Source of the DNA: Auanema rhodensis
Taxonomy: Eukaryota > Animalia > Nematoda
NCBI GenBank assembly: GCA_964057225.1
Contig: OZ059900.1
Location: forward strand, 6,572,001-6,636,000
DNA: 64,000 nucleotides
Direction: 5' to 3'
The notes under the pieces are model-generated. The model worked only from the letters and a program-made list of their open reading frames with translations. It did not search any database and was not told where the DNA came from. Each line of letters begins with the position of its first letter. Within the stretch, counting starts at the first letter, position 1. Both the position numbers and the translations under genes were made by a program. Below are positions 1 through 58,052 of this stretch, one piece after another.

Positions 1-149
1 ACCTACGCGGGCAATGCCCATTGGATTTCAAGTCCAACTCCTTAACCACTCGGACATCGCTGCTTATTTCAAGCAATCCTTTTTTAATAGAGAAAGGCAA
101 CTAGTTCATAAAAATTCCATACAATATCAACAAAAGAAACAAAAACTTA

Positions 150-231
150 CGCAGCGAGCAGGGTTCGAACCTACGCGGGCAATGCCCATTGGATTTCAAG
201 TCCAACTCCTTAACCACTCGGACATCGCTGC
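150..231 (-). tRNA. tRNA-Ser(TGA), representative first complete copy
   Basis: Reverse complement GCAGCGA TG TCC GAGTGGTTAA GGA G TTGGA CTTGAAA TCCAA TGGGCATTGCCCGC GTAGG TTCGAAC CCTGC TCGCTGC G. It has a 7-bp acceptor stem, anticodon TGA, long variable arm GGGC/GCCC, discriminator G73, no encoded CCA, and is followed by TAAGTTTTT (Pol III terminator). Confidence 0.97.
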
Positions 232-3200
232 TTATTTCAAGCAATCCTTTTTTAATAGAGAAAGGCAACTAGTTCATAAAAATTCCATACAATATCAACA
301 AATGAAACAAAAACTTACGCAGCGAGCAGGGTTCGAACCTACGCGGGAAATGCCCATTGGATTTCAAGTCCAACTCCTTAACCACTCGGACATCGCTGCT
401 TATTTCAAGCAATCCGTTTTTAATAGAGAAAGGCAACTAGTTCATAAAAGTTCCATACAATATCAACAAATGAAACAAAAACTTACGCAGCGAGCAGGGT
501 TCGAACCTACGCGGGCAATGCCCATTGGATTTCAAGTCCAACTCCTTAACCACTCGGACATCGCTGCTTATTTCAAGCAATCTTTTTTTAACAGAGAAAG
601 GCAACTAGTTCATGAAAATTCCATACAATATCAACAAATGAAACAAAAACTTACGCAGCGAGCAGGGTTCGAACCTACGCGGGCAATGCCCATTGGATTT
701 CAAGTCCAACTCCTTAACCACTCGGACATCGCTGCTTATTTCAAGCAATCTTTTTTTAGCAGAGAAAGGCAACTAGTTCAATGAAAATTCCATACAATAT
801 CAACAAATGAAACAAAAACTTACGCAGCGAGCAGGGTTCGAACCTACGCGGGCAATGCCCATTGGATTTCAAGTCCAACTCCTTAACCACTCGGACATCG
901 CTGCTTATTTCAAGCAATCCGTTTTTAATAGAGAAAGGCAACTAGTTCATAAAAGTTCCATACAATATCAACAAATGAAACAAAAACTTACGCAGCGAGC
1001 AGGGTTCGAACCTACGCGGGCAATGCCCATTGGATTTCAAGTCCAACTCCTTAACCACTCGGACATCGCTGCTTATTTCAAGCAATCCGTTTTTAATAGA
1101 GAAAGGCAACTAGTTCATAAAAGTTCCATACAATATCAACAAATGAAACAAAAACTTACGCAGCGAGCAGGGTTCGAACCTACGCGGGCAATGCCCATTG
1201 GATTTCAAGTCCAACTCCTTAACCACTCGGACATCGCTGCTTATTTCAAGCAATCCTTTTTTAATAGAGAAAGGCAACTAGTTCATGAAAATTCCATACA
1301 ATATCAACAAAAGAAACAAAAACTTACGCAGCGAGCAGGGTTCGAACCTACGCGGGCAATGCCCATTGGATTTCAAGTCCAACTCCTTAACCACTCGGAC
1401 ATCGCTGCTTATTTCAAGCAATCTTTTTTTAACAGAGAAAGGCAACTAGTTCATAAAAATTCCATACAATATCAACAAATGAAACAAAAATTTACGCAGC
1501 GAGCAGGGTTCGAACCTACGCGGGCAATGCCCATTGGATTTCAAGTCCAACTCCTTAACCACTCGGACATCGCTGCTTATTTCAAGCAATCTTTTTTTAA
1601 CAGAGAAAGGCAACTAGTTCATAAAAGTTCCATACAATATCAACAAATGAAACAAAAACTTACGCAGCGAGCAGGGTTCGAACCTACGCGGGCAATGCCC
1701 ATTGGATTTCAAGTCCAACTCCTTAACCACTCGGACATCGCTGCTTATTTCAAGCAATCCTTTTTTAATAGAGAAAGGCAACTAGTTCATAAAAGTTCCA
1801 TACAATATCAACAAATGAAACAAAAACTTACGCAGCGAGCAGGGTTCGAACCTACGCGGGCAATGCCCATTGGATTTCAAGTCCAACTCCTTAACCACTC
1901 GGACATCGCTGCTTATTTCAAGCAATCTTTTTTTAACAGAGAAAGGCAACTAGTTCATAAAAGTTCCATACAATATCAACAAAAGAAACAAAAACTTACG
2001 CAGCGAGCAGGGTTCGAACCTACGCGGGCAATGCCCATTGGATTTCAAGTCCAACTCCTTAACCACTCGGACATCGCTGCTTATTTCAAGCAATCTTTTT
2101 TTAACAGAGAAAGGCAACTAGTTCATAAAAGTTCCATACAATATCAACAAATGAAACAAAAACTTACGCAGCGAGCAGGGTTCGAACCTACGCGGGCAAT
2201 GCCCATTGCATTTCAAGTCCAACTCCTTAACCACTCGGACATCGCTGCTTATTTCAAGCAATCTTTTTTTAACAGAGAAAGGCAACTAGTTCATGAAAAT
2301 TCCATACAATATCAACAAATGAAACAAAAACTTACGCAGCGAGCAGGGTTCGAACCTACGCGGGCAATGCCCATTGGATTTCAAGTCCAACTCCTTAACC
2401 ACTCGGACATCGCTGCTTATTTCAAGCAATCTTTTTTTAACAGAGAAAGGCAACTAGTTCATGAAAATTCCATACAATATCAACAAATGAAACAAAAACT
2501 TACGCAGCGAGCAGGGTTCGAACCTACGCGGGCAATGCCCATTGGATTTCAAGTCCAACTCCTTAACCACTCGGACATCGCTGCTTATTTCAAGCAATCT
2601 TTTTTTAACAGAGAAAGGCAACTAGTTCATGAAAATTCCATACAATATCAACAAATGAAACAAAAACTTACGCAGCGAGCAGGGTTCGAACCTACGCGGG
2701 CAATGCCCATTGGATTTCAAGTCCAACTCCTTAACCACTCGGACATCGCTGCTTATTTCAAGCAATCTTTTTTTAACAGAGAAAGGCAACTAGTTCAATG
2801 AAAATTCCATACAATATCAACAAATGAAACAAAAACTTACGCAGCGAGCAGGGTTCGAACCTACGCGGGCAATGCCCATTCGATTTCAAGTCCAACTCCT
2901 TAACCACTCGGACATCGCTGCTTATTTCAAGCAATCCGTTTTTAATAGAGAAAGGCAACTAGTTCATAAAAGTTCCATACAATATCAACAAATGAAACAA
3001 AAACTTACGCAGCGAGCAGGGTTCGAACCTACGCGGGCAATGCCCATTGGATTTCAAGTCCAACTCCTTAACCACTCGGACATCGCTGCTTATTTCAAGC
3101 AATCCGTTTTTAATAGAGAAAGGCAACTAGTTCATGAAAATTCCATACAATATCAACAAATGAAACAAAAACTTACGCAGCGAGCAGGGTTCGAACCTAC

Positions 3201-6200
3201 GCGGGCAATGCCCATTGGATTTCAAGTCCAACTCCTTAACCACTCGGACATCGCTGCTTATTTCAAGCAATCTTTTTTTAACAGAGAAAGGCAACTAGTT
3301 CATGAAAATTCCATACAATATCAACAAATGAAACAAAAACTTACGCAGCGAGCAGGGTTCGAACCTACGCGGGCAATGCCCATTGGATTTCAAGTCCAAC
3401 TCCTTAACCACTCGGACATCGCTGCTTATTTCAAGCAATCTTTTTTTAACAGAGAAAGGCAACTAGTTCAATGAAAATTCCATACAATATCAACAAATGA
3501 AACAAAAACTTACGCAGCGAGCAGGGTTCGAACCTACGCGGGCAATGCCCATTGGATTTCAAGTCCAACTCCTTAACCACTCGGACATCGCTGCTTATTT
3601 CAAGCAATCCGTTTTTAATAGAGAAAGGCAACTAGTTCATAAAAGTTCCATACAATATCAACAAATGAAACAAAAACTTACGCAGCGAGCAGGGTTCGAA
3701 CCTACGCGGGCAATGCCCATTGGATTTCAAGTCCAACTCCTTAACCACTCGGACATCGCTGCTTATTTCAAGCAATCCGTTTTTAATAGAGAAAGGCAAC
3801 TAGTTCATAAAAGTTCCATACAATATCAACAAATGAAACAAAAACTTACGCAGCGAGCAGGGTTCGAACCTACGCGGGCAATGCCCATTGGATTTCAAGT
3901 CCAACTCCTTAACCACTCGGACATCGCTGCTTATTTCAAGCAATCCTTTTTTAATAGAGAAAGGCAACTAGTTCATGAAAATTCCATACAATATCAACAA
4001 AAGAAACAAAAACTTACGCAGCGAGCAGGGTTCGAACCTACGCGGGCAATGCCCATTGGATTTCAAGTCCAACTCCTTAACCACTCGGACATCGCTGCTT
4101 ATTTCAAGCAATCTTTTTTTAACAGAGAAAGGCAACTAGTTCATAAAAATTCCATACAATATCAACAAATGAAACAAAAATTTACGCAGCGAGCAGGGTT
4201 CGAACCTACGCGGGCAATGCCCATTGGATTTCAAGTCCAACTCCTTAACCACTCGGACATCGCTGCTTATTTCAAGCAATCTTTTTTTAACAGAGAAAGG
4301 CAACTAGTTCATAAAAGTTCCATACAATATCAACAAATGAAACAAAAACTTACGCAGCGAGCAGGGTTCGAACCTACGCGGGCAATGCCCATTGGATTTC
4401 AAGTCCAACTCCTTAACCACTCGGACATCGCTGCTTATTTCAAGCAATCTTTTTTTAACAGAGAAAGGCAACTAGTTCATAAAAGTTCCATACAATATCA
4501 ACAAATGAAACAAAAACTTACGCAGCGAGCAGGGTTCGAACCTACGCGGGCAATGCCCATTGCATTTCAAGTCCAACTCCTTAACCACTCGGACATCGCT
4601 GCTTATTTCAAGCAATCTTTTTTTAACAGAGAAAGGCAACTAGTTCATGAAAATTCCATACAATATCAACAAATGAAACAAAAACTTACGCAGCGAGCAG
4701 GGTTCGAACCTACGCGGGCAATGCCCATTGGATTTCAAGTCCAACTCCTTAACCACTCGGACATCGCTGCTTATTTCAAGCAATCTTTTTTTAACAGAGA
4801 AAGGCAACTAGTTCATGAAAATTCCATACAATATCAACAAATGAAACAAAAACTTACGCAGCGAGCAGGGTTCGAACCTACGCGGGCAATGCCCATTGGA
4901 TTTCAAGTCCAACTCCTTAACCACTCGGACATCGCTGCTTATTTCAAGCAATCCTTTTTTAATAGAGAAAGGCAACTAGTTCATAAAAATTCCATACAAT
5001 ATCAACAAATGAAACAAAAACTTACGCAGCGAGCAGGGTTCGAACCTACGCGGGCAATGCCCATTGGATTTCAAGTCCAACTCCTTAACCACTCGGACAT
5101 CGCTGCTTATTTCAAGCAGTCCTTTTTTAATAGAGAAAGGCAACTAGTTCATAAAAATTCCATACAATATCAACAAAAGAAACAAAAACTTACGCAGCGA
5201 GCAGGGTTCGAACCTACGCGGGCAATGCCCATTGGATTTCAAGTCCAACTCCTTAACCACTCGGACATCTCTGCTTATTTCAAGCAATCCTTTTTTAATA
5301 GAGAAAGGCAACTAGTTCATAAAAATTCCATACAATATCAACAAATGAAACAAAAACTTACGCAGCGAGCAGGGTTCGAACCTACGCGGGCAATGCCCAT
5401 TGGATTTCAAGTCCAACTCCTTAACCACTCGGACATCGCTGCTTATTTCAAGCAATCCGTTTTTAATAGAGAAAGGCAACTAGTTCATAAAAGTTCCATA
5501 CAATATCAACAAATGAAACAAAAACTTACGCAGCGAGCAGGGTTCGAACCTACGCGGGCAATGCCCATTGGATTTCAAGTCCAACTCCTTAACCACTCGG
5601 ACATCGCTGCTTATTTCAAGCAATCCGTTTTTAATAGAGAAAGGCAACTAGTTCATAAAAGTTCCATACAATATCAACAAATGAAACAAAAACTTACGCA
5701 GCGAGCAGGGTTCGAACCTACGCGGGCAATGCCCATTGGATTTCAAGTCCAACTCCTTAACCACTCGGACATCGCTGCTTATTTCAAGCAATCTTTTTTT
5801 AACAGAGAAAGGCAACTAGTTCATAAAAGTTCCATACAATATCAACAAATGAAACAAAAACTTACGCAGCGAGCAGGGTTCGAACCTACGCGGGCAATGC
5901 CCATAGGATTTCAAGTCCAACTCCTTAACCACTCGGACATCGCTGCTTATTTCAAGCAATCTTTTTTTAACAGAGAAAGGCAACTAGTTCAAAAAATTCC
6001 ATACAATATCAACAAAAGAAACAAAAACTTACGCAGCGAGCAGGGTTCGAACCTACGCGGGCAATGCCCATTGGATTTCAAGTCCAACTCCTTAACCACT
6101 CGGACATCGCTGCTTATTTCAAGCAATCCTTTTTTAATAGAGAAAGGCAACTAGTTCATAAAAGTTCCATACAATATCAACAAATGAAACAAAAACTTAC

Positions 6201-9200
6201 GCAGCGAGCAGGGTTCGAACCTACGCGGGCAATGCCCATTGGATTTCAAGTCCAACTCCTTAACCACTCGGACATCGCTGCTTATTTCAAGCAATCTTTT
6301 TTTAACAGAGAAAGGCAACTAGTTCATAAAAGTTCCATACAATATCAACAAATGAAACAAAAACTTACGCAGCGAGCAGGGTTCGAACCTACGCGGGCAA
6401 TGCCCATTGGATTTCAAGTCCAACTCCTTAACCACTCGGACATCGCTGCTTATTTCAAGCAATCTTTTTTTAACAGAGAAAGGCAACTAGTTCATAAAAA
6501 TTCCATACAATATCAACAAAAGAAACAAAAACTTACGCAGCGAGCAGGGTTCGAACCTACGCGGGCAATGCCCATTGGATTTCAAGTCCAACTCCTTAAC
6601 CACTCGGACATCGCTGCTTATTTCAAGCAATCCTTTTTTAATAGAGAAAGGCAACTAGTTCATAAAAATTCCATACAATATCAACAAAAGAAACAAAAAC
6701 TTACGCAGCGAGCAGGGTTCGAACCTACGCGGGCAATGCCCATTGGATTTCAAGTCCAACTCCTTAACCACTCGGACATCGCTGCTTATTTCAAGCAATC
6801 TTTTTTTAACAGAGAAAGGCAACTAGTTCATAAAAGTTCCATACAATATCAACAAATGAAACAAAAACTTACGCAGCGAGCAGGGTTCGAACCTACGCGG
6901 GCAATGCCCATTGGATTTCAAGTCCAACTCCTTAACCACTCGGACATCGCTGCTTATTTCAAGCAATCTTTTTTTAACAGAGAAAGGCAACTAGTTCATA
7001 AAAATTCCATACAATATCAACAAAAGAAACAAAAACTTACGCAGCGAGCAGGGTTCGAACCTACGCGGGCAATGCCCATTGGATTTCAAGTCCAACTCCT
7101 TAACCACTCGGACATCGCTGCTTATTTCAAGCAATCCTTTTTTAATAGAGAAAGGCAACTAGTTCATAAAAATTCCATACAATATCAACAAAAGAAACAA
7201 AAACTTACGCAGCGAGCAGGGTTCGAACCTACGCGGGCAATGCCCATTGGATTTCAAGTCCAACTCCTTAACCACTCGGACATCGCTGCTTATTTCAAGC
7301 AATCCTTTTTTAATAGAGAAAGGCAACTAGTTCATAAAAATTCCATACAATATCAACAAATGAAACAAAAACTTACGCAGCGAGCAGGGTTCGAACCTAC
7401 GCGGGCAATGCCCATTGGATTTCAAGTCCAACTCCTTAACCACTCGGACATCGCTGCTTATTTCAAGCAATCTTTTTTTAACAGAGAAAGGCAACTAGTT
7501 CATGAAAATTCCATACAATATCAACAAATGAAACAAAAACTTACGCAGCGAGCAGGGTTCGAACCTACGCGGGCAATGCCCATTGGATTTCAAGTCCAAC
7601 TCCTTAACCACTCGGACATCGCTGCTTATTTCAAGCAATCTTTTTTTAACAGAGAAAGGCAACTAGTTCATAAAAATTCCATACAATATCAACAAAAGAA
7701 ACAAAAACTTACGCAGCGAGCAGGGTTCGAACCTACTCGGGCAATGCCCATTGGATTTCAAGTCCAACTCCTTAACCACTCGGACATCGCTGCTTATTTC
7801 AAGCAATCCTTTTTTAATAGAGAAAGGCAACTAGTTCATAAAAATTCCATACAATATCAACAAAAGAAACAAAAACTTACGCAGCGAGCAGGGTTCGAAC
7901 CTACGCGGGCAATGCCCATTGGATTTCAAGTCCAACTCCTTAACCACTCGGACATCGCTGCTTATTTCAAGCAATCCTTTTTTAATAGAGAAAGGCAACT
8001 AGTTCATAAAAGTTCCATACAATATCAACAAATGAAACAAAAACTTACGCAGCGAGCAGGGTTCGAACCTACGCGGGCAATGCCCATTGGATTTCAAGTC
8101 CAACTCCTTAACCACTCGGACATCGCTGCTTATTTCAAGCAATCTTTTTTTAACAGAGAAAGGCAACTAGTTCATAAAAGTTCCATACAATATCAACAAA
8201 TGAAACAAAAACTTACGCAGCGAGCAGGGTTCGAACCTACGCGGGCAATGCCCATTGGATTTCAAGTCCAACTCCTTAACCACTCGGACATCGCTGCTTA
8301 TTTCAAGCAATCTTTTTTTAACAGAGAAAGGCAACTAGTTCATAAAAATTCCATACAATATCAACAAAAGAAACAAAAACTTACGCAGCGAGCAGGGTTC
8401 GAACCTACGCGGGCAATGCCCATTGGATTTCAAGTCCAACTCCTTAACCACTCGGACATCGCTGCTTATTTCAAGCAATCCTTTTTTAATAGAGAAAGGC
8501 AACTAGTTCATAAAAATTCCATACAATATCAACAAAAGAAACAAAAACTTACGCAGCGAGCAGGGTTCGAACCTACGCGGGCAATGCCCATTGGATTTCA
8601 AGTCCAACTCCTTAACCACTCGGACATCGCTGCTTATTTCAAGCAATCTTTTTTTAACAGAGAAAGGCAACTAGTTCATAAAAGTTCCATACAATATCAA
8701 CAAATGAAACAAAAACTTACGCAGCGAGCAGGGTTCGAACCTACGCGGGCAATGCCCATTGGATTTCAAGTCCAACTCCTTAACCACTCGGACATCGCTG
8801 CTTATTTCAAGCAATCTTTTTTTAACAGAGAAAGGCAACTAGTTCATAAAAATTCCATACAATATCAACAAAAGAAACAAAAACTTACGCAGCGAGCAGG
8901 GTTCGAACCTACGCGGGCAATGCCCATTGGATTTCAAGTCCAACTCCTTAACCACTCGGACATCGCTGCTTATTTCAAGCAATCCTTTTTTAATAGAGAA
9001 AGGCAACTAGTTCATAAAAATTCCATACAATATCAACAAAAGAAACAAAAACTTACGCAGCGAGCAGGGTTCGAACCTACGCGGGCAATGCCCATTGGAT
9101 TTCAAGTCCAACTCCTTAACCACTCGGACATCGCTGCTTATTTCAAGCAATCTTTTTTTAACAGAGAAAGGCAACTAGTTCAATGAAAATTCCATACAAT

Positions 9201-12200
9201 ATCAACAAATGAAACAAAAACTTACGCAGCGAGCAGGGTTCGAACCTACGCGGGCAATGCCCATTGGATTTCAAGTCCAACTCCTTAACCACTCGGACAT
9301 CGCTGCTTATTTCAAGCAATCTTTTTTTAACAGAGAAAGGCAACTAGTTCATGAAAATTCCATACAATATCAACAAATGAAACAAAAACTTACGCAGCGA
9401 GCAGGGTTCGAACCTACGCGGGCAATGCCCATTGGATTTCAAGTCCAACTCCTTAACCACTCGGACATCGCTGCTTATTTCAAGCAATCTTTTTTTAACA
9501 GAGAAAGGCAACTAGTTCATAAAAATTCCATACAATATCAACAAAAGAAACAAAAACTTACGCAGCGAGCAGGGTTCGAACCTACTCGGGCAATGCCCAT
9601 TGGATTTCAAGTCCAACTCCTTAACCACTCGGACATCGCTGCTTATTTCAAGCAATCCTTTTTTAATAGAGAAAGGCAACTAGTTCATAAAAATTCCATA
9701 CAATATCAACAAAAGAAACAAAAACTTACGCAGCGAGCAGGGTTCGAACCTACGCGGGCAATGCCCATTGGATTTCAAGTCCAACTCCTTAACCACTCGG
9801 ACATCGCTGCTTATTTCAAGCAATCTTTTTTTAACAGAGAAAGGCAACTAGTTCAATGAAAATTCCATACAATATCAACAAATGAAACAAAAACTTACGC
9901 AGCGAGCAGGGTTCGAACCTACGCGGGCAATGCCCATTGGATTTCAAGTCCAACTCCTTAACCACTCGGACATCGCTGCTTATTTCAAGCAATCTTTTTT
10001 TAACAGAGAAAGGCAACTAGTTCATGAAAATTCCATACAATATCAACAAATGAAACAAAAACTTACGCAGCGAGCAGGGTTCGAACCTACGCGGGCAATG
10101 CCCATTGGATTTCAAGTCCAACTCCTTAACCACTCGGACATCGCTGCTTATTTCAAGCAATCTTTTTTTAACAGAGAAAGGCAACTAGTTCATAAAAATT
10201 CCATACAATATCAACAAAAGAAACAAAAACTTACGCAGCGAGCAGGGTTCGAACCTACGCGGGCAATGCCCATTGGATTTCAAGTCCAACTCCTTAACCA
10301 CTCGGACATCGCTGCTTATTTCAAGCAATCCGTTTTTAATAGAGAAAGGCAACTAGTTCATAAAAGTTCCATACAATATCAACAAATGAAACAAAAACTT
10401 ACGCAGCGAGCAGGGTTCGAACCTACGCGGGCAATGCCCATTGGATTTCAAGTCCAACTCCATAACCACTCGGACATCGCTGCTTATTTCAAGCAATCTT
10501 TTTTTAACAGAGAAAGGCAACTAGTTCATAAAAATTCCATACAATATCAACAAAAGAAACAAAAACTTACGCAGCGAGCAGGGTTCGAACCTACGCGGGC
10601 AATGCCCATTGGATTTCAAGTCCAACTCCTTAACCACTCGGACATCGCTGCTTATTTCAAGCAATCTTTTTTTAACAGAGAAAGGCAACTAGTTCATAAA
10701 AGTTCCATACAATATCAACAAATGAAACAAAAACTTACGCAGCGAGCAGGGTTCGAACCTACGCGGGCAATGCCCATTGGATTTCAAGTCCAACTCCTTA
10801 ACCACTCGGACATCGCTGCTTATTTCAAGCAATCTTTTTTTAACAGAGAAAGGCAACTAGTTCATAAAAATTCCATACAATATCAACAAAAGAAACAAAA
10901 ACTTACGCAGCGAGCAGGGTTCGAACCTACGCGGGCAATGCCCATTGGATTTCAAGTCCAACTCCTTAACCACTCGGACATCGCTGCTTATTTCAAGCAA
11001 TCTTTTTTTAACAGAGAAAGGCAACTAGTTCATGAAAATTCCATACAATATCAACAAATGAAACAAAAACTTACGCAGCGAGCAGGGTTCGAACCTACGC
11101 GGGCAATGCCCATTGGATTTCAAGTCCAACTCCTTAACCACTCGGACATCGCTGCTTATTTCAAGCAATCTTTTTTTAACAGAGAAAGGCAACTAGTTCA
11201 TAAAAATTCCATACAATATCAACAAAAGAAACAAAAACTTACGCAGCGAGCAGGGTTCGAACCTACGCGGGCAATGCCCATTGGATTTCAAGTCCAACTC
11301 CTTAACCACTCGGACATCGCTGCTTATTTCAAGCAATCTTTTTTTAACAGAGAAAGGCAACTAGTTCAATGAAAATTCCATACAATATCAACAAATGAAA
11401 CAAAAACTTACGCAGCGAGCAGGGTTCGAACCTACGCGGGCAATGCCCATTGGATTTCAAGTCCAACTCCTTAACCACTCGGACATCGCTGCTTATTTCA
11501 AGCAATCTTTTTTTAACAGAGAAAGGCAACTAGTTCATGAAAATTCCATACAATATCAACAAAAGAAACAAAAACTTACGCAGCGAGCAGGGTTCGAACC
11601 TACGCGGGCAATGCCCATTGGATTTCAAGTCCAACTCCTTAACCACTCGGACATCGCTGCTTATTTCAAGCAATCTTTTTTTAACAGAGAAAGGCAACTA
11701 GTTCAATGAAAATTCCATACAATATCAACAAATGAAACAAAAACTTACGCAGCGAGCAGGGTTCGAACCTACGCGGGCAATGCCCATTGGATTTCAAGTC
11801 CAACTCCTTAACCACTCGGACATCGCTGCTTATTTCAAGCAATCTTTTTTTAACAGAGAAAGGCAACTAGTTCATAAAAATTCCATACAATATCAACAAA
11901 AGAAACAAAAACTTACGCAGCGAGCAGGGTTCGAACCTACTCGGGCAATGCCCATTGGATTTCAAGTCCAACTCCTTAACCACTCGGACATCGCTGCTTA
12001 TTTCAAGCAATCCTTTTTTAATAGAGAAAGGCAACTAGTTCATAAAAATTCCATACAATATCAACAAAAGAAACAAAAACTTACGCAGCGAGCAGGGTTC
12101 GAACCTACGCGGGCAATGCCCATTGGATTTCAAGTCCAACTCCTTAACCACTCGGACATCGCTGCTTATTTCAAGCAATCTTTTTTTAACAGAGAAAGGC

Positions 12201-39880: not shown

Positions 39881-39954
39881 GTTCGAGTGGTTAAAGTGTT
39901 AGACTCAAAATCCAATGGGCGTTGCCTGCGTAGGTTCGAATCCTGCTCGCTGCG
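39881..39954 (+). pseudogene. 5'-truncated tRNA-Ser pseudogene with CAA anticodon
   Basis: gttcgagtggttaaagtgttagactcaaaatcc: first 8 nt missing, D and anticodon stems mutated, loop CTCAAAA. Confidence 0.85.
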
Positions 39955-40812: not shown

Positions 40813-41213
40813 AGTTATCGATTGTACTTGTACCAAAATCAATAATGATGTTACTAGATGTGTTTGTCCAGAACATAATGTTACGCATTTCTCTCATTTT
40901 TTACCTGCTCATATGTCAAATACAGAAATAATCTATAAACTCCATAAACTCCATAAACCCTTAACATTTCGTACCCAAGCTGATGAAACTACAGTTGTTA
41001 TTGATTCTGATTATATAACTGTTTTACGTTTTCATGTGTTCTACCTTGTCGTCTTCTATTGATAAGTCTCTCGGGATGCTATTACTGTGGACAAAGTGCA
41101 TCCGCATTGATTATGTTCTGGACCTACACATCCAGTAACATCATCATTGATTTTAGTACAAGTACACTCGATATCCTGTGTATCGATCGTCATATTGAAA
41201 AAAGAGTAATTCA
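40813..41213. repeat. Duplicated env-remnant fragment (reverse complement of 39203-39603)
   Basis: Direct sequence match; also repeated at 44237-44637. Confidence 0.92.
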
Positions 41214-43959: not shown

Positions 43960-44637
43960 GATAAAAAATATTGTAACGTATCGATATTCGAAAACCACTT
44001 TTTCAAAATGGAGAATATAATTTAGGTTCCATATGTGGAATATTCTCAGATGAAGTTGGAGGAAGTTTAATAACTCCTAATTCAATATCATTTTGTTCCT
44101 GAGTAAGAGGTTTGAATGTTAAAAAAGATTTTGTTGCATCGAACAATCAAATCTTTGCTTTTAAACCAAATTTTCCATTCATGGTACAAAGTACAACACG
44201 AGCAGATACTTCTGACAGTTTTCCAAGATGTACAACAGTTATCGATTGTACTTGTACCAAAATCAATAATGATGTTACTAGATGTGTTTGTCCAGAACAT
44301 AATGTTACGCATTTCTCTCATTTTTTACCTGCTCATATGTCAAATACAGAAATAATCTATAAACTCCATAAACTCCATAAACCCTTAACATTTCGTACCC
44401 AAGCTGATGAAACTACAGTTGTTATTGATTCTGATTATATAACTGTTTTACGTTTTCATGTGTTCTACCTTGTCGTCTTCTATTGATAAGTCTCTCGGGA
44501 TGCTATTACTGTGGACAAAGTGCATCCGCATTGATTATGTTCTGGACATACACATCCAGTAACATCATCATTGATTTTAGTACAAGTACACTCGATATCC
44601 TGTGTATCGATCGTCATATTGAAAAAAGAGTAATTCA
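43960..44637. repeat. Duplicated env-remnant segment (reverse complement of 39203-39880)
   Basis: Paired coordinates sum to 83840 (39881/43959, 39203/44637); the ORF track shows identical 124-aa peptides at 39354-39728(-) and 44112-44486(+). Confidence 0.93.
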
Positions 44638-47600: not shown

Positions 47601-47846
47601 TGAAAATATTTCTCAAAAAAATCTGGAAGAACCCAAAAAATTACGCAGCGAGCAGGATTCGAACCTACGCAGGCAACGCCCATTGGATTTCGAGTCCAAC
47701 TCCTTAACCACTCGGACATCGCTGCTCATTTCAGCTAATTCCGTTTCAGAAGAATAATACAGGCTTTTGAAAATGTTGCTCAAAAAAATCTGGAAGAACC
47801 CAAAAAATATCGCAGCGAGCAGGATTCGAACCTACGCAGGCAACGC
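44636..47846 (-). repeat. tRNA-Ser(CGA) array block 3, 20 copies including truncated ends
   Basis: Same unit; the last copy is cut in the variable arm at 47846. Confidence 0.95.
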
Positions 47847-50800
47847 TTTTTGGGTTCTTCCAGATTTTTCTGAGAAAGCATTTTCAAATGTATTATTCTT
47901 CTGAAAATGAATTTGCTGGAATGAGCAGCGATGTCCGAGTGGTTAAGGAGTTGGACTCGAAATCCAATGGGCGTTGCCTGCGTAGGTTCGAATCCTGCTC
48001 GCTGCGTAATTTTTTGGGTTCTTCCAGATTTTTTTGAGAAACATTTTCAAATGCCTGTGTATTTCTTCTGAAAATGAATTTGCTGAAACGAGCAGCGATG
48101 TCCGAGTGGTTAAGGAGTTGGACTCGAAATCCAATGGGCGTTGCCTGCGTAGGTTCGAATCCTGCTCGCTGCGTAATTTTTTGGGTTCTTCCAGATTTTT
48201 TTGAGAAACATTTTCGAATACCTGTGTATTTCTTCTGAAAATGAATTTGCTGGAATGAGCAGCGATGTCCGAGTGGTTAAGGAGTTGGACTCGAAATCCA
48301 ATGGGCGTTGCCTGCGTAGGTTCGAATCCTGCTCGCTGCGAAATTTTTTGGGTTCTTCCAGATTTTTTTGAGCAACATTTTCAAAAGCCTGTATTATTCT
48401 TCTGAAACGGAATTAGCTGAAATGAGCAGCGATGTCCGAGTGGTTAAGGAGTTGGACTCGAAATCCAATGGGCGTTGCCTGCGTAGGTTCGAATCCTGCT
48501 CGCTGCGTAATTTTTTGGGTTCTTCCAGATTTTTTTGAGGAATATTTTCAAATGCCTGTATTTTTCTTCTGAAAATGAATTTGCTGAAATAAGCAGCGAT
48601 GTCCGAGTGGTTAAGGAGTTGGACTCGAAATCCAATGGGCGTTGCCTGCGTAGGTTCGAATCCTGCTCGCTGCGAAATTTTTTGGGTTCTTCCAGATTTT
48701 TTTGAGAAACATTTTCAAATGCCTGTATTATTCTTCTGAAAATGAATTTGCTGGAATGAGCAGCGATGTCCGAGTGGTTAAGGAGTTGGACTCGAAATCC
48801 AATGGGCGTTGCCTGCGTAGGTTCGAATCCTGCTCGCTGCGAAATTTTTTGGGTTCTTTCAGATTTTTCTGAGAAAGCATTTTCAAATGCCTGTATTATT
48901 CTTCTGAAACGGAATTAGCTGAAATGAGCAGCGATGTCCGAGTGGTTAAGGAGTTGGACTCGAAATCCAATGGGCGTTGCCTGCGTAGGTTCGAATCCTG
49001 CTCGCTGCGTAATTTTTTGGGTTCTTCCAGATTTTTTTGAGAAAGCATTTTCAAATGCCTGTATTATTCTTCTGAAACGGAATTAGCTGAAATGAGCAGC
49101 GATGTCCGAGTGGTTAAGGAGTTGGACTCGAAATCCTATGGGCGTTGCCTGCGTAGGTTCGAATCCTGCTCGCTGCGAAATTTTTTGGGTTCTTTCAGAT
49201 TTTTCTGAGAAAGCATTTTCAAATGCCTGTGTTTTTCTTCTGAAACGGAATTAGCTAAAATGAGCAGCGATGTCCGAGTGGTTAAGGAGTTGGACTCGAA
49301 ATCCAATGGGCGTTGCCTGCGTAGGTTCGAATCCTGCTCGCTGCGTAATTTTTTGGGTTCTTCCAGATTTTTTTGAGAAATATTTTCAAATGCCTGTATT
49401 TTTCTTCTGAAAATGAATTTGCTGAAATAAGCAGCGATGTCCGAGTGGTTAAGGAGTTGGACTCGAAATCCAATGGGCGTTGCCTGCGTAGGTTCGAATC
49501 CTGCTCGCTGCGAAATTTTTTGGGTTCTTCCAGAATTTTTTGAGAAACATTTTCAAATGCCTGTATTTTTCTTCTGAAAATGAATTTGCTGAAATAAGCA
49601 GCGATGTTCGAGTGGTTAAGGAGTTGGACTCGAAATCCAATGGGCGTTGCCTGCGTAGGTTCGAATCCTGCTCGCTGCGAAATTTTTTGGGTTCTTCCAG
49701 ATTTTTCTGAGAAAGCATTTTCAAAAGCCTGTATTATTCTTCTGAAACGGAATTAGCTGAAATGAGCAGCGATGTCCGAGTGGTTAAGGAGTTGGACTCG
49801 AAATCCAATGGGCGTTGCCTGCGTAGGTTCGAATCCTGCTCGCTGCGAAATTTTTTGGGTTCTTTCAGATTTTTCTGAGAAAGCATTTTCAAATGCCTGT
49901 ATTATTCTTCTGAAACGGAATTAGCTGAAATGAGCAGCGATGTCCGAGTGGTTAAGGAGTTGGACTCGAAATCCAATGGGCGTTGCCTGCGTAGGTTCGA
50001 ATCCTGCTCGCTGCGAAATTTTTTAGGTTCTTCCAGATTTTTCTGAGAAAGCATTTTCAAATGCCTGTATTATTCTTCTGAAAATGAATTTGCTGGAATG
50101 AGCAGCGATGTCCGAGTGGTTAAGGAGTTGGACTCGAAATCCAATGGGCGTTGCCTGCGTAGGTTCGAATCCTGCTCGCTGCGAAATTTTTTGGGTTCTT
50201 CCAGATTTTTCTGAGAAAGCATTTTCAAATGCCTGTGTTTTTCTTCTGAAACGGAATTAGCTGAAATGAGCAGCGATGTCCGAGTGGTTAAGGAGTTGGA
50301 CTCGAAATCCAATGGGCGTTGCCTGCGTAGGTTCGAATCCTGAAGCGTAATTTTTTGGGTTCTTCCAGATTTTTTTGAGCAACATTTTCAAAAGCCTGTA
50401 TTATTCTTCTGATACGGAATTAGCAGAAATGAGCAGCGATGTCCGAGTGGTTAAGGAGTTGGACTCGAAATCCAATGGGCGTTGCCTGCGTAGGTTCGAA
50501 TCCTGCTCGCTGCGTAATTTTTTGGGTTCTTCCAGATTTTTTTGAGAAATATTTTCAAATGCCTGTATTATTCTTCTGAAAATGAATTTGCTGGAATGAG
50601 CAGCGATGTCCGAGTGGTTAAGGAGTTGGACTCGAAATCCAATGGGCGTTGGCTGCGTAGGTTCGAATCCTGCTCGCTGCGAAATTTTTTGGGTTCTTCC
50701 AGATTTTTCTGAGAAAGCATTTTCAAATGCCTGTGTTTTTCTTCTGAAACGGAATTAGCTAAAATGAGCAGCGATGTCCGAGTGGTTAAGGAGTTGGACT

Positions 50801-53800
50801 CGAAATCCAATGGGCGTTGCCTGCGTAGGTTCGAATCCTGCTCGCTGCGTAATTTTTTGGGTTCTTCCAGATTTTTTTGAGAAATATTTTCAAATGCCTG
50901 TATTTTTCTTCTGAAAATGAATTTGCTGAAATAAGCAGCGATGTCCGAGTGGTTAAGGAGTTGGACTCGAAATCCAATGGGCGTTGCCTGCGTAGGTTCG
51001 AATCCTGCTCGCTGCGAAATTTTTTGGGTTCTTCCAGATTTTTTTGAGAAACATTTTCAAATGCCTGTATTTTTCTTCTGAAACGGAATTAGCTGAAATG
51101 AGCAGCGATGTCCGAGTGGTTAAGGAGTTGGACTCGAAATCCAATGGGCGTTGCCTGCGTAGGTTCGAATCCTGCTCGCTGCGAAATTTTTTGGGTTCTT
51201 TCAGATTTTTCTGAGAAAGCATTTTCAAATGCCTGTATTATTCTTCTGAAACGGAATTAGCTGAAATGAGCAGCGATGTCCGAGTGGTTAAGGAGTTGGA
51301 CTCGAAATCCAATGGGCGTTGCCTGCGTAGGTTCGAATCCTGCTCGCTGCGAAATTTTTTGGGTTCTTTCAGATTTTTCTGAGAAAGCATTTTCAAATGC
51401 CTGTATTATTCTTCTGAAACGGAATTAGCTGAAATGAGCAGCGATGTCCGAGTGGTTAAGGAGTTGGACTCGAAATCCAATGGGCGTTGCCTGCGTAGGT
51501 TCGAATCCTGCTCGCTGCGAAATTTTTTAGGTTCTTCCAGATTTTTCTGAGAAAGCATTTTCAAATGCCTGTATTATTCTTCTGAAAATGAATTTGCTGG
51601 AATGAGCAGCGATGTCCGAGTGGTTAAGGAGTTGGACTCGAAATCCAATGGGCGTTGCCTGCGTAGGTTCGAATCCTGCTCGCTGCGAAATTTTTTGGGT
51701 TCTTCCAGATTTTTCTGAGAAAGCATTTTCAAATGCCTGTGTTTTTCTTCTGAAACGGAATTAGCTGAAATGAGCAGCGATGTCCGAGTGGTTAAGGAGT
51801 TGGACTCGAAATCCAATGGGCGTTGCCTGCGTAGGTTCGAATCCTGAAGCGTAATTTTTTGGGTTCTTCCAGATTTTTTTGAGCAACATTTTCAAAAGCC
51901 TGTATTATTCTTCTGATACGGAATTAGCAGAAATGAGCAGCGATGTCCGAGTGGTTAAGGAGTTGGACTCGAAATCCAATGGGCGTTGCCTGCGTAGGTT
52001 CGAATCCTGCTCGCTGCGTAATTTTTTGGGTTCTTCCAGATTTTTTTGAGAAATATTTTCAAATGCCTGTATTATTCTTCTGAAAATGAATTTGCTGGAA
52101 TGAGCAGCGATGTCCGAGTGGTTAAGGAGTTGGACTCGAAATCCAATGGGCGTTGGCTGCGTAGGTTCGAATCCTGCTCGCTGCGAAATTTTTTGGGTTC
52201 TTCCAGATTTTTCTGAGAAAGCATTTTCAAATGCCTGTGTTTTTCTTCTGAAACGGAATTAGCTAAAATGAGCAGCGATGTCCGAGTGGTTAAGGAGTTG
52301 GACTCGAAATCCAATGGGCGTTGCCTGCGTAGGTTCGAATCCTGCTCGCTGCGTAATTTTTTGGGTTCTTCCAGATTTTTTTGAGAAATATTTTCAAATG
52401 CCTGTATTTTTCTTCTGAAAATGAATTTGCTGAAATAAGCAGCGATGTCCGAGTGGTTAAGGAGTTGGACTCGAAATCCAATGGGCGTTGCCTGCGTAGG
52501 TTCGAATCCTGCTCGCTGCGAAATTTTTTGGGTTCTTCCAGATTTTTTTGAGAAACATTTTCAAATGCCTGTATTTTTCTTCTGAAAATGAATTTGCTGA
52601 AATAAGCAGCGATGTTCGAGTGGTTAAGGAGTTGGACTCGAAATCCAATGGGCGTTGCCTGCGTAGGTTCGAATCCTGCTCGCTGCGAAATTTTTTGGGT
52701 TCTTCCAGATTTTTTTGAGCAACATTTTCAAAAGCCTGTATTATTCTTCTGAAACGGAATTAGCTGAAATGAGCAGCGATGTCCGAGTGGTTAAGGAGTT
52801 GGACTCGAAATCCAATGGGCGTTGCCTGCGTAGGTTCGAATCCTGCTCGCTGCGTAATTTTTTGGGTTCTTCCAGATTTTTCTGAGAAATATTTTCAAAT
52901 GCCTGTATTTTTCTTCTGAAAATGAATTTGCTGAAATAAGCAGCGATGTCCGAGTGGTTAAGGAGTTGGACTCGAAATCCAATGGGCGTTGCCTGCGTAG
53001 GTTCGAATCCTGCTCGCTGCGTAATTTTTTGGGTTCTTCCAGATTTTTTTGAGAAATATTTTCAAATGCCTGTATTATTCTTCTGAAAATGAATTTGCTG
53101 GAATGAGCAGCGATGTCCGAGTGGTTAAGGAGTTGGACTCGAAATCCAATGGGCGTTGGCTGCGTAGGTTCGAATCCTGCTCGCTGCGAAATTTTTTGGG
53201 TTCTTCCAGATTTTTCTGAGAAAGCATTTTCAAATGCCTGTGTTTTTCTTCTGAAACGGAATTAGCTAAAATGAGCAGCGATGTCCGAGTGGTTAAGGAG
53301 TTGGACTCGAAATCCAATGGGCGTTGCCTGCGTAGGTTCGAATCCTGCTCGCTGCGTAATTTTTTGGGTTCTTCCAGATTTTTTTGAGAAATATTTTCAA
53401 ATGCCTGTATTTTTCTTCTGAAAATGAATTTGCTGAAATAAGCAGCGATGTCCGAGTGGTTAAGGAGTTGGACTCGAAATCCAATGGGCGTTGCCTGCGT
53501 AGGTTCGAATCCTGCTCGCTGCGTAATTTTTTGGGTTCTTCCAGATTTTTTTGAGAAATATTTTCAAAAGCCTGTATTATTCTTCTGAAACGGAATTAGC
53601 TGAAATGAGCAGCGATGTCCGAGTGGTTAAGGAGTTGGACTCGAAATCCAATGGGCGTTGCCTGCGTAGGTTCGAATCCTGCTCGCTGCGTAATTTTTTG
53701 GGTTCTTCCAGATTTTTCTGAGAAATATTTTCAAATGCCTGTATTTTTCTTCTGAAAATGAATTTGCTGAAATAAGCAGCGATGTCCGAGTGGTTAAGGA

Positions 53801-56800
53801 GTTGGACTCGAAATCCAATGGGCGTTGCCTGCGTAGGTTCGAATCCTGCTCGCTGCGAAATTTTTTGGGTTCTTCCAGATTTTTTTGAGAAACATTTTCG
53901 AATGCCTGTATTATTCTTCTGAAAATGAATTTGCTGGAATGAGCAGCGATGTCCGAGTGGTTAAGGAGTTGGACTCGAAATCCAATGGGCGTTGCCTGCG
54001 TAGGTTCGAATCCTGCTCGCTGCGAAATTTTTTGGGTTCTTCCAGATTTTTTTGAGAAACATTTTCGAATGCCTGTATTATTCTTCTGAAAATGAATTTG
54101 CTGGAATGAGCAGCGATGTCCGAGTGGTTAAGGAGTTGGACTCGAAATCCAATGGGCGTTGCCTGCGTAGGTTCGAATCCTGCTCGCTGCGATATTTTTT
54201 GGGTTCTTCCAGATTTTTCTGAGAAAGCATTTTCAAATGCCTGTGTTTTTCTTCTGAAACGGAATTAGCTGAAATGAGCAGCGATGTCCGAGTGGTTAAG
54301 GAGTTGGACTCGAAATCCAATGGGCGTTGCCTGCGTAGGTTCGAATCCTGCTCGCTGCGTAATTTTTTGGGTTCTTCCAGATTTTTTTGAGAAATATTTT
54401 CAAATGCCTGTATTATTCTTCTGAAACGGAATTAGCTGAAATGAGCAGCGATGTCCGAGTGGTTAAGGAGTTGGACTCGAAATCCAATGGGCGTTGCCTG
54501 CGTAGGTTCGAATCCTGCTCGCTGCGAAATTTTTTGGGTTCTTCCAGATTTTTTTGAGAAATATTTTCAAATGCCTGTATTTTTCTTCTGAAAATGAATT
54601 TGCTGAAATAAGCAGCGATGTCCGAGTGGTTAAGGAGTTGGACTCGAAATCCAATGGGCGTTGCCTGCGTAGGTTCGAATCCTGCTCGCTGCGAAATTTT
54701 TTGGGTTCTTCCAGATTTTTCTGAGAAAGCATTTTCAAATGCCTGTGTTTTTCTTCTGAAACGGAATTAGCTGAAATGAGCAGCGATGTCCGAGTGGTTA
54801 AGGAGTTGGACTCGAAATCCAATGGGCGTTGCCTGCGTAGGTTCGAATCCTGCTCGCTGCGAAATTTTTTGGGTTCTTCCAGATTTTTTTGAGAAATATT
54901 TTCAAATGCCTGTATTATTCTTCTGAAACGGAATTAGCTGAAATAAGCAGCGATGTCCGAGTGGTTAAGGAGTTGGACTCGAAATCCAATGGGCGTTGCC
55001 TGCGTAGGTTCGAATCCTGCTCGCTGCGAAATTTTTTGGGTTCTTCCAGATTTTTTTGAGAAACATTTTCGAATACCTGTGTTTTTCTTCTGAAACGGAA
55101 TTAGCTGAAATGAGCAGCGATGTCCGAGTGGTTAAGGAGTTGGACTCGAAATCCAATGGGCGTTGCCTGCGTAGGTTCGAATCCTGCTCGCTGCGTAATT
55201 TTTTGGGTTCTTCCAGATTTTTTTGAGAAATATTTTCAAATGCCTGTATTTTTCTTCTGAAAATGAATTTGCTGAAATAAGCAGCGATGTCCGAGTGGTT
55301 AAGGAGTTGGACTCGAAATCCAATGGGCGTTGCCTGCGTAGGTTCGAATCCTGCTCGCTGCGTAATTTTTTGGGTTCTTCCAGATTTTTTTGAGAAACAT
55401 TTTCGAATACCTGTGTATTTCTTCTGAAAATGAATTTGCTGGAATGAGCAGCGATGTCCGAGTGGTTAAGGAGTTGGACTCGAAATCCAATGGGCGTTGC
55501 CTGCGTAGGTTCGAATCCTGCTCGCTGCGAAATTTTTTGGGTTCTTCCAGATTTTTTTGAGCAACATTTTCAAAAGCCTGTATTATTCTTCTGAAACGGA
55601 ATTAGCTGAAATGAGCAGCGATGTCCGAGTGGTTAAGGAGTTGGACTCGAAATCCAATGGGCGTTGCCTGCGTAGGTTCGAATCCTGCTCGCTGCGAAAT
55701 TTTTTGGGTTCTTCCAGATTTTTTTGAGAAATATTTTCAAATGCCTGTATTTTTCTTCTGAAAATGAATTTGCTGAAATAAGCAGCGATGTCCGAGTGGT
55801 TAAGGAGTTGGACTCGAAATCCAATGGGCGTTGCCTGCGTAGGTTCGAATCCTGCTCGCTGCGAAATTTTTTGGGTTCTTCCAGATTTTTTTGAGAAACA
55901 TTTTCAAATGCCTGTATTATTCTTCTGAAAATGAATTTGCTGGAATGAGCAGCGATGTCCGAGTGGTTAAGGAGTTGGACTCGAAATCCAATGGGCGTTG
56001 CCTGCGTAGGTTCGAATCCTGCTCGCTGCGTAATTTTTTGGGTTCTTCCAGATTTTTTTGAGAAACATTTTCGAATACCTGTGTATTTCTTCTGAAAATG
56101 AATTTGCTGGAATGAGCAGCGATGTCCGAGTGGTTAAGGAGTTGGACTCGAAATCCAATGGGCGTTGCCTGCGTAGGTTCGAATCCTGCTCGCTGCGAAA
56201 TTTTTTGGATTCTTTCAGATTTTTCTGAGAAAGCATTTTCAAATGCATGTATTATTCTTCTGAAACGGAATTAGCTGAAATGAGCAGCGATGTCCGAGTG
56301 GTTAAGGAGTTGGACTCGAAATCCAATGGGCGTTGCCTGCGTAGGTTCGAATCCTGCTCGCTGCGAAATTTTTTGGGTTCTTCCAGATTTTTTTGAGCAA
56401 CATTTTCAAAAGCCTGTATTATTCTTCTGAAACGGAATTAGCTGAAATGAGCAGCGATGTCCGAGTGGTTAAGGAGTTGGACTCGAAATCCAATGGGCGT
56501 TGCCTGCGTAGGTTCGAATCCTGCTCGCTGCGAAATTTTTTGGGTTCTTCCAGATTTTTTTGAGAAATATTTTCAAATGCCTGTATTTTTATTCTGAAAA
56601 TGAATTTGCTGAAATAAGCAGCGATGTCCGAGTGGTTAAGGAGTTGGACTCGAAATCCAATGGGCGTTGCCTGCGTAGGTTCGAATCCTGCTCGCTGCGA
56701 AATTTTTTGGGTTCTTCCAGATTTTTTTGAGAAACATTTTCAAATGCCTGTATTATTCTTCTGAAAATGAATTTGCTGGAATGAGCAGCGATGTCCGAGT

Positions 56801-58052
56801 GGTTAAGGAGTTGGACTCGAAATCCAATGGGCGTTGCCTGCGTAGGTTCGAATCCTGCTCGCTGCGAAATTTTTTGGGTTCTTTCAGATTTTTCTGAGAA
56901 AGCATTTTCAAATGCCTGTATTATTCTTCTGAAACGGAATTAGCTGAAATGAGCAGCGATGTCCGAGTGGTTAAGGAGTTGGACTCGAAATCCAATGGGC
57001 GTTGCCTGCGTAGGTTCGAATCCTGCTCGCTGCGTAATTTTTTGGGTTCTTCCAGATTTTTTTGAGAAACATTTTCGAATACCTGTGTATTTCTTCTGAA
57101 AATGAATTTGCTGAAACGAGCAGCGATGTCCGAGTGGTTAAGGAGTTGGACTCGAAATCCAATGGGCGTTGCCTGCGTAGGTTCGAATCCTGCTCGCTGC
57201 GTAATTTTTTGGGTTCTTCCAGATTTTTTTGAGAAATATTTTCAAATGCCTGTATTTTTCTTCTGAAAATGAATTTGCTGAAATAAGCAGCGATGTCCGA
57301 GTGGTTAAGGAGTTGGACTCGAAATCCAATGGGCGTTGCCTGCGTAGGTTCGAATCCTGCTCGCTGCGAAATTTTTTGGGTTCTTCCAGATTTTTCTGAG
57401 AAGCATTTTCAAATGCCTGTATTATTCTTCTGAAACAGAATTAGCTGAAATGAGCAGCGATGTCCGAGTGGTTAAGGAGTTGGACTCGAAATCCAATGGG
57501 CGTTGCCTGCGTAGGTTCGAATCCTGCTCGCTGCGTAATTTTTTGGGTTCTTCCAGATTTTTTTGAGAAACATTTTCGAATACCTGTGTTTTTCTTCTGA
57601 AAATGAATTTGCTGAAACGAGCAGCGATGTCCGAGTGGTTAAGGAGTTGGACTCGAAATCCAATGGGCGTTGCCTGCGTAGGTTCGAATCCAGCTCGCTG
57701 CGAAATTTTTTGGGTTCTTCCAGATTTTTTTGAGAAATATTTTCAAATGCCTGTATTTTTCTTCTGAAAATGAATTTGCTGAAATAAGCAGCGATGTCCG
57801 AGTGGTTAAGGAGTTGGACTCGAAATCCAATGGGCGTTGCCTGCGTAGGTTCGAATCCTGCTCGCTGCGAAATTTTTTGGGTTCTTCCAGATTTTTTTGA
57901 GAAACATTTTCAAATGCCTGTATTATTCTTCTGAAAATGAATTTGCTGGAATGAGCAGCGATGTCCGAGTGGTTAAGGAGTTGGACTCGAAATCCAATGG
58001 GCGTTGCCTGCGTAGGTTCGAATCCTGCTCGCTGCGAAATTTTTTGGGTTCT
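47847..58052 (+). repeat. tRNA-Ser(CGA) array block 4, about 61 copies
   Basis: First gene at 47925, last at 57955-58036; ~167.3-bp spacing. Confidence 0.96.

What the first reader, a model, noticed from the sequence alone, without database searches (positions are those of the whole stretch)
1..58052. tRNA genes as satellite DNA: over 300 tRNA-Ser genes in two adjacent single-isoacceptor tandem arrays
Seen: about 211 Ser(TGA) and about 105 Ser(CGA) genes, mostly with intact cloverleafs, A/B boxes and T-run terminators, separated by only ~86 bp. Known: tandem tRNA arrays occur in Entamoeba and some animals, and multicopy RNA-gene arrays are reported among germline-restricted DNA in some nematodes with programmed DNA elimination. 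Inference: this copy number far exceeds decoding need, so the arrays may have a structural role (heterochromatin, TFIIIC/condensin platform, germline-limited block) or supply germline tRNA or tRNA fragments.
Basis: partly seen in the sequence, partly recalled or inferred. Interest (0 to 1): 0.85.

Follow-up and report, generated by a model that had tools for sequence, protein, structure and literature searches.

The report
Twin serine tRNA gene tandem arrays
A probable roundworm genome carries over 300 mostly intact serine-tRNA genes packed head to tail in two sister arrays; such arrays are already known in nematodes and other eukaryotes, and here selection appears to protect the tRNA molecule itself rather than only the DNA repeat.

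Summary
Confirmed. There are 210 full Ser(TGA) genes plus one cut by the window edge (168-bp unit, minus strand, 1-35410) and 104 Ser(CGA)-type copies (167/168-bp unit, 38345-58052). About 89% keep the cloverleaf and boxes; 308 of 314 have a T-run of 5 or more. The array looks biological, not an assembly expansion: spacer alleles recombine and change in frequency along it, and the longest exact duplicate is 1.5 kb. The two arrays are sisters. Their spacers are homologous but ~41% diverged, while the genes differ at 4 of 82 sites, all tolerated. Common variants sit almost only in spacers, and conservation extends outside the A/B boxes, so selection has acted on the tRNA product. A broken LTR element separates the arrays; the CGA part has recent fold-back inversions. 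The host is probably a rhabditid nematode (genus unproven; not human). No elimination-site motif was found between the array and a syndapin-like gene 5.5 kb away. Best reading: a 5S-rDNA-like, concertedly evolving tRNA gene family with surplus copies. A structural or germline-limited role is unshown. Precedents exist in Auanema rhodense (19,554 tRNA loci) and A. freiburgense (307-tRNA X cluster).

The parts
1..35410 (-). Ser(TGA) array: 210 full genes plus one cut by the window start; unit 168 bp (82 gene + 86 spacer), nine 169-bp units and one 167-bp unit; continues beyond the left edge
150..231 (-). Representative tRNA-Ser(TGA) gene (consensus type, long variable arm, A and B boxes, T5 terminator at +5 to +9)
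35446..35877 (+). Left LTR-like direct repeat of an internally deleted Ty3/gypsy-like element (431 bp, 6 differences from the right copy); exact 5' end uncertain
35878..35895 (+). Primer-binding-site-like 18-mer, complementary to a tRNA 3' end with CCA (tRNA-Gln-like from memory; not Ser)
   Evidence: isotype from own knowledge
36645..37949 (+). gag-like ORF (434 aa) that runs into the right LTR; no pol
   Evidence: PF03732 E=4.6e-5, 24.0 bits versus cut-off 24.1; 74 relatives at 24-35% identity
37893..38323 (+). Right LTR-like repeat
38325..38419 (-). Relic unit: 5'-truncated gene with all four CGA-array diagnostic bases but a TGA-array-type trailer; links the two arrays
38420..39880 (.). Non-tRNA insert with broken pieces of a cysteine-rich, phlebovirus-glycoprotein-like sequence; bounded by 189-bp inverted arms (38399-38587 and 39712-39900, 95%)
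   Evidence: PF07245 E=7.5e-4, below cut-off, for piece 39052-39357
39873..40813 (+). Ser(CGA) block 1: one 5'-truncated copy and 5 full genes
40813..41213 (-). Inverted copy of 39203-39603 (99.75%)
41210..43967 (-). Ser(CGA) block 2: 15 full genes, one 5-bp-deletion copy, one 5'-truncated copy
43940..44637 (-). Inverted copy of 39203-39900 (100%; the exact inverted match is 947 bp with adjoining units)
44634..47846 (-). Ser(CGA) block 3: 18 full genes, one deletion copy, and a half gene at the inversion point
47847..58052 (+). Ser(CGA) block 4: 59 full genes and two deletion copies; its unit order partly mirrors block 3 (fold-back duplication); array ends abruptly at 58052
63552..64000 (-). 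Context: last exons of a syndapin/PACSIN-like gene (SH3 domain; exons to 63839, 63703-63633 and 63590-63552; introns 135 and 42 nt)
   Evidence: PF00018 E=2.9e-6; best PDB hits are PACSINs but weak; splice sites seen directly

Best explanation
Two sister tandem arrays of ordinary RNA polymerase III tRNA-Ser genes that evolve in concert, like 5S rDNA. Shown: each 167-168-bp unit is a complete type-2 gene (cloverleaf, internal A/B boxes, own T-run). Shown: the two arrays descend from one gene-plus-spacer unit, and one lineage changed the wobble base (T34 versus C34). Shown: units are shuffled by multi-unit duplications, recombination and, in the CGA part, fold-back inversions. Shown: gene mutations arise about as often as spacer mutations but almost never spread. 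Inferred: each unit is transcribed separately (TFIIIC on the boxes, TFIIIB in the 86-bp spacer, close to the minimum room it needs) and yields normal tRNA-Ser for UCA/UCG codons. Inferred: unequal exchange and fork stalling at dense Pol III genes drive copy number well above need, so only part of the array is probably active at a time. Inferred: the arrays were once contiguous and were split by the LTR element.
For: Intact genes 280/314 and T-runs 308/314. Diversity gene versus spacer: 0.0036 versus 0.030 (TGA) and 0.012 versus 0.071 (CGA). Rare alleles (3 copies or fewer): 31 gene, 34 spacer; common alleles (5 or more): 0 gene, 26 spacer, Fisher p=3e-6; one tolerated G-U change, C11T, reaches 5 copies when array-edge genes are counted. 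Between arrays the genes differ at 4/82 tolerated sites while spacers match at 51/87 columns, score 60 versus shuffles 28.7 +/- 7, 0/2000. Outside the boxes: 3/59 differences versus 24 expected. A relic unit joins a CGA body to a TGA trailer. Four-gamete recombination and allele gradients along the array.
Against: No expression data. Equal rare-variant load in gene and spacer, with 18 damaged TGA copies, shows that single copies are not protected; the pattern also fits recent neutral amplification from a few functional founders. Spacer alleles are linked, so the p-values are overstated. The middle of the spacer alignment alone is only marginal (68/2000). Some singletons could be sequencing errors. 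Gene conversion from dispersed Ser genes elsewhere could also keep the gene body clean.
Confidence: 0.58

Rival explanations
1. Germline-limited or germline-expressed block: the arrays lie in DNA removed from somatic cells (as tRNA tandem arrays do in Auanema rhodense) or are active mainly in oocytes (as Xenopus oocyte 5S and tRNA clusters), supplying tRNA-Ser or its fragments to the germline.
For: A. rhodense has 19,554 tRNA loci, tandem tRNA blocks in eliminated DNA and repeat units of 167-504 nt (10.64898/2026.08.27.747507), against about 500 tRNA loci in its earlier somatic assembly (PMC6469403). Three of the four best gag hits are from Auanema sp. JU1783. Broken transposon DNA at the array fits such regions.
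Against: No GGC-N3/4-GCC core in non-array DNA and no motif score above shuffles between the array and the syndapin-like gene. tRNA coverage here is 49% per 10 kb versus 'always <20%' in that paper. The gag tree does not group the window with the Auanema proteins.
Confidence: 0.15
2. Structural DNA platform: hundreds of B boxes bind TFIIIC/condensin, or the block forms a chromosome-specific heterochromatin or pairing domain; the RNA is secondary.
For: Unit length held at 167-168 bp, about one nucleosome repeat (own knowledge), despite ~41% spacer divergence. Chromosome-specific repeat blocks have been proposed as pairing aids in A. rhodense. A 307-tRNA cluster lies in the broad X-drive QTL of A. 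freiburgense.
Against: Selection covers the acceptor stem, anticodon stem and variable arm, which TFIIIC does not need. The length also fits a minimal Pol III unit. The tRNA cluster lay outside the QTL peak and is not mentioned in the published version.
Confidence: 0.1
3. Neutral, silent satellite: a small cluster of functional genes was recently amplified without benefit. Conservation is inherited from the founders and the copies are mostly silent and slowly decaying.
For: Rare variants are as dense in gene as in spacer. A damaging 5-bp deletion has spread to 4 copies. The A. freiburgense cluster was reported as strain-specific. The A. rhodense authors view repeat build-up as an epiphenomenon.
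Against: Spacer alleles show a continuous frequency range (4-8, 12-19, 31-79 copies) while gene substitutions stop at 3-5 copies. This suggests continued removal of gene variants during turnover.
Confidence: 0.14
4. Assembly artefact: a few copies were expanded or mis-joined by the assembler.
For: One 947-bp inverted copy is 100% identical. Raw reads are not available.
Against: 58 distinct TGA and 46 distinct CGA unit sequences. The longest exact duplicate is 1479 bp of 35 kb, with allele gradients and recombinant haplotypes. Duplicated blocks differ by whole-unit gains and losses.
Confidence: 0.03

Closest known systems
Auanema rhodense tandem tRNA blocks (bioRxiv 10.64898/2026.08.27.747507)
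   Same: Rhabditid nematode with a huge number of intact tRNA loci (19,554; only 215 pseudogenes) in tandem blocks; smallest repeat unit 167 nt; AT-rich genome with tiny introns (32% GC, median intron 47 nt; PMC6469403).
   Different: Those blocks are in eliminated DNA, with stated ncRNA density under 20% per 10 kb; here it is 49% and no elimination motif was found. The paper's text gives no isotype, unit structure or selection analysis (tables not readable). Species identity is not established.
Auanema freiburgense X-chromosome tRNA cluster (bioRxiv 10.1101/2023.05.16.540925)
   Same: About 300 tRNA genes in one gene-free cluster in a rhabditid genome.
   Different: 307 tRNAs over 137 kb (1 per ~450 bp) versus 315 in 58 kb here, with the array running off the window; isotype not given. 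The match of 307 to the ARAGORN count here is probably coincidence. Same locus not shown.
Entamoeba tRNA arrays (PMC2652664)
   Same: Head-to-tail tRNA gene units homogenised by concerted evolution; copy number above apparent need.
   Different: Units hold up to 5 genes, with short tandem repeats in the spacers of E. histolytica and E. dispar, and nearly all tRNA genes are arrayed. Here there is one gene per 167-168-bp unit with a simple spacer, 5.5 kb from a protein-coding gene.
5S rDNA arrays and Xenopus oocyte tRNA/5S clusters (PMC1635290)
   Same: Tandem Pol III genes with conserved gene and variable spacer; only part may be active in a tissue.
   Different: The Xenopus tRNA repeat is 3.18 kb with 8 tRNA genes of several kinds; oocyte-specific expression is shown there and untested here.
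Large tDNA clusters of Nematostella and teleost fish (PMC2888827); Arabidopsis 81-gene array (PMC2886086, abstract only)
   Same: Clusters of 50 or more tRNA genes made by local duplication.
   Different: Mostly mixed-isotype clusters or triplet units; not single-isoacceptor minimal units in sister arrays.

Membership tests
Eukaryotic type-2 Pol III tRNA-Ser gene | Cloverleaf with long variable arm and Ser anticodon | tested here: met
   280/314 copies intact
Eukaryotic type-2 Pol III tRNA-Ser gene | Internal A and B boxes and a downstream T-run terminator | tested here: met
Eukaryotic type-2 Pol III tRNA-Ser gene | Transcribed, processed and charged | not testable with these tools
   no RNA or ChIP data
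Concertedly evolving tandem RNA-gene array (5S-rDNA-like) | Head-to-tail units more alike within than between arrays, with recombination among units | tested here: met
   mean 3.0 and 7.5 differences per unit within arrays, about 40 between; four gametes seen
Concertedly evolving tandem RNA-gene array (5S-rDNA-like) | Gene conserved, spacer variable | tested here: met
Entamoeba-type tRNA array | Short tandem repeats in spacers and multi-gene units | tested here: not met
   single-gene units; no short-period repeat reported in the arrays
Entamoeba-type tRNA array | Nearly all isoacceptors of the genome arrayed | not testable with these tools
   only one window
Germline-restricted tandem repeat of a nematode with programmed DNA elimination | Palindromic elimination motif between the repeat block and retained genes | tested here: not met
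   motif rebuilt only approximately from PMC13060919; Caenorhabditis-type motifs not tested
Germline-restricted tandem repeat of a nematode with programmed DNA elimination | Lower somatic read depth and telomere addition at the border | not testable with these tools
   no reads; no telomere repeat run in the window
Auanema rhodense locus | Sequence assignable to that species | tested here: inconclusive
   best gag hits Auanema sp. JU1783 at 29-32% but no grouping in the tree; four published FISH probes of other repeat families do not match; syndapin exon searches blank
tRNA-derived satellite or SINE (decayed) | Degenerate tRNA body evolving as fast as its flanks | tested here: not met
Centromeric satellite | CENP-A occupancy | not testable with these tools
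   only the 167-168-bp unit length is suggestive; no regular higher-order repeat

The most novel reading that the evidence does not exclude
The arrays are a soma-retained, chromosome-specific Pol III domain whose copy number matters for chromosome behaviour or germline translation. One version: they are, or are homologous to, the strain-specific tRNA cluster in the broad X-chromosome drive QTL of Auanema freiburgense, so that a tRNA-gene satellite helps bias X segregation.
Probability: 0.07. Interest if true: 0.85.

Novelty: new variant of a known kind. Interest (0 to 1): 0.42.

Why it matters
Tandem tRNA arrays are known, including thousands of loci in Auanema rhodense, so the basic finding is not new in kind. 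This locus adds three things. The unit is about the smallest a Pol III gene can be. Two sister arrays capture an anticodon switch together with a junction relic. A within-array test indicates that selection acts on the tRNA molecule rather than on the promoter boxes alone. Array-specific leaders and trailers make it directly testable whether such surplus tRNA genes are expressed, an open question for these arrays generally.

Tried and rejected
Species identification failed. The gag search in the 90% database was blank and the exact look-up was blank. Relatives in the 50% library were only 24-35% identical, and the tree left the window's gag unplaced on a long branch (quick search only). The syndapin exon and an ORF at 58673-59077 found nothing; these length-limited blanks say nothing about full-length kin. 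The spliced syndapin model was searched exon by exon and the joined search was left out, as the operators instruct. DNA pattern scans of metagenome, genome and viral contigs were blank. The long plus-strand ORF through the TGA array (1258 aa) was rejected: it is the antisense reading of a 168-bp (56-codon) unit and ten units of other length break the frame. The GGC-N3-GCC in each gene's variable arm was rejected as an elimination motif, because the outer arms score 0/14 on the CGA unit and the unit scores no better than shuffles of other regions. A regular higher-order repeat was not found. Free-energy folding does not give the full cloverleaf for unmodified tRNA and was not used as evidence; the covariance model and pair counts were. 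The glycoprotein-like pieces were only scanned separately and were not joined. The first fuzzy-regex script timed out. Supplements of the Auanema papers held no tRNA table.
Full report
Observation. ARAGORN finds 307 tRNA-Ser genes, 210 with anticodon TGA on the minus strand between 150 and 35351 and 97 with CGA between 40041 and 58036. TRF gives periods of 168 and 167/168. A direct scan finds 211 TGA copies (one cut by the window start) and 104 CGA-type copies. Of the full-length positions, 192/210 and 88/104 keep all stems and invariant bases, and 308/314 have a run of five or more T just downstream. Both gene types score about 60 bits on the Rfam tRNA model. Two details need correcting: about 4.5 kb of other DNA separates the arrays, and the CGA part is four blocks in two orientations.

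Is it real? The TGA array has 58 distinct unit sequences and the CGA array 46. Common spacer alleles occur in all four combinations at most site pairs and change in frequency along the array; for example the allele at unit position 118 occurs 18, 8, 11, 0 and 0 times in successive fifths. The longest exact duplicate is 1479 bp. Duplicated blocks differ by whole units. This is what unequal exchange leaves, not what an assembler makes by copying. Raw reads were not available, so single junctions, especially the 947-bp perfect inverted copy, remain unverified.

Selection. Diversity is about 8-fold (TGA) and 6-fold (CGA) lower in the gene than in the spacer. Rare alleles are equally dense in both (31 versus 34), but alleles at five or more copies number 0 versus 26. 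The single exception, when array-edge genes are counted, is C11T at five copies, a tolerated G-U pair. Between the arrays the genes differ at four sites: the wobble base 34, two variable-arm bases and T-loop position 69, all compatible with the structure. The spacers align almost without gaps at 59% identity, well above shuffles, so the arrays share an ancestral unit. Outside the A and B boxes only 3 of 59 gene sites differ where about 24 would at the spacer rate. A DNA platform for TFIIIC would need only the boxes, so the constraint points to the tRNA molecule. Limits: spacer alleles are linked, so p-values are inflated. The same pattern could partly come from recent amplification of a few functional founders or from conversion by dispersed genes. 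The continuous range of spacer allele frequencies against a ceiling of 3-5 copies for gene substitutions favours some ongoing selection.

History of the locus. Upstream of the last TGA gene the spacer decays and is followed by an internally deleted LTR element: two 431-bp repeats with six differences, a primer-binding-site-like 18-mer and a gag-like ORF without pol. Directly after it lies a 5'-truncated gene with all four CGA diagnostic bases but a TGA-type trailer. I infer that the two arrays were once contiguous and in one orientation, and that the element landed in a spacer at the switch point; no clean target-site duplication is visible. Next comes 1.4 kb with broken glycoprotein-like pieces inside 95%-identical inverted arms. 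Parts of it recur inverted at 40813-41213 and 43940-44637, and the unit order of block 4 partly mirrors block 3 around 47847. These fold-back duplications fit fork stalling at dense tRNA genes, which PMC2888827 discusses; that cause is inference.

Host. The flank is 29.5% GC. The right end holds the last exons of an SH3 protein whose best, though weak, structural-database matches are PACSINs, with introns of 135 and 42 nt. Three of the four best gag matches are from Auanema sp. JU1783 and another is from Caenorhabditis brenneri, but at about 30% identity, and the tree does not place the window's gag with them. Phlebovirus-like env genes in LTR elements are a nematode feature (own knowledge). 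A rhabditid nematode is likely and Auanema is plausible but unproven; I do not take the sequence for human. The syndapin model was searched exon by exon only; the joined search was left out.

Elimination. In O. tipulae and A. rhodense, breaks occur at a 29-bp palindrome with a GGC-N3-GCC core. No such core occurs in any non-array DNA, and an approximate motif scores no better than shuffles between 58040 and 63560. If the host uses this motif, the array's right end shares the fate of the syndapin-like gene, most likely retention in the soma. The test is weak if the motif differs, as in Caenorhabditis.

Mechanism. Most likely (0.58) this is a concertedly evolving family of ordinary tRNA-Ser genes. 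Shown: gene anatomy, common ancestry, turnover and constraint on the tRNA body. Inferred: separate transcription of each unit, partial activity, and surplus copy number as a by-product of tandem amplification. Rivals: germline-limited or germline-expressed block (0.15), neutral silent satellite (0.14), structural platform (0.10), assembly artefact (0.03).

Comparison and novelty. Tandem tRNA arrays are described in Entamoeba, Xenopus, Nematostella and fish. In nematodes, A. rhodense has 19,554 tRNA loci and tandem tRNA blocks in eliminated DNA. An A. freiburgense preprint reports 307 strain-specific tRNAs clustered in the broad X-drive QTL; this lay outside the peak and is absent from the published version. 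The kind is therefore known. In the papers I could read I found no description of single-isoacceptor minimal-unit sister arrays or of this selection pattern, but their supplementary tables were not readable. Verdict: real, a variant of a known kind, interest 0.42.

Noticed in passing
window 63552-64000 (-): Last three exons of a syndapin/PACSIN-like gene (SH3 domain split by introns of 135 and 42 nt); the gene continues beyond the window.
   Followed up: partly
window 60379-63040: A 2.66-kb palindromic (fold-back or MITE-like) element with about 1.2-kb arms, 83% alike overall and 98% near the centre; no coding capacity seen.
   Followed up: no
window 35446-38323: gag-only LTR element with a primer-binding site that looks like tRNA-Gln, not Ser, lying about 95 bp upstream of the last TGA gene; no relative above 35% identity in 1.8 billion protein clusters.
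   Followed up: partly
window 38420-39880 (partial copies at 40813-41213 and 43940-44637): Broken pieces of a cysteine-rich, phlebovirus-glycoprotein-like sequence, probably a decayed retroelement env; pieces scanned separately only.
   Followed up: partly
window 58673-59077 (-) and 58058-58246 (+): Stop-free stretches of 135 and 63 aa that look like coding exons but have no Pfam match; the longer one also had no database match.
   Followed up: partly
window 39873-39954 and 43886-43967: Two 5'-truncated copies read CAA (Leu) at the anticodon; both lack the 5' acceptor strand, so they are unlikely to make a mistranslating tRNA.
   Followed up: yes
every gene, unit positions 46-54: The variable arm contains GGC-N3-GCC, the core of the Oscheius elimination motif (309 hits), but the outer arms do not match; probably coincidence.
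   Followed up: yes
both arrays: Unit length stays 167-168 bp despite ~41% spacer divergence; A. rhodense repeat units are reported as 167-504 nt (504 = 3 x 168). Nucleosome spacing or a minimal Pol III footprint could explain it.
   Followed up: no
window 58768-58797: A short imperfect palindrome with 9-bp arms inside the unexplained stop-free stretch.
   Followed up: no
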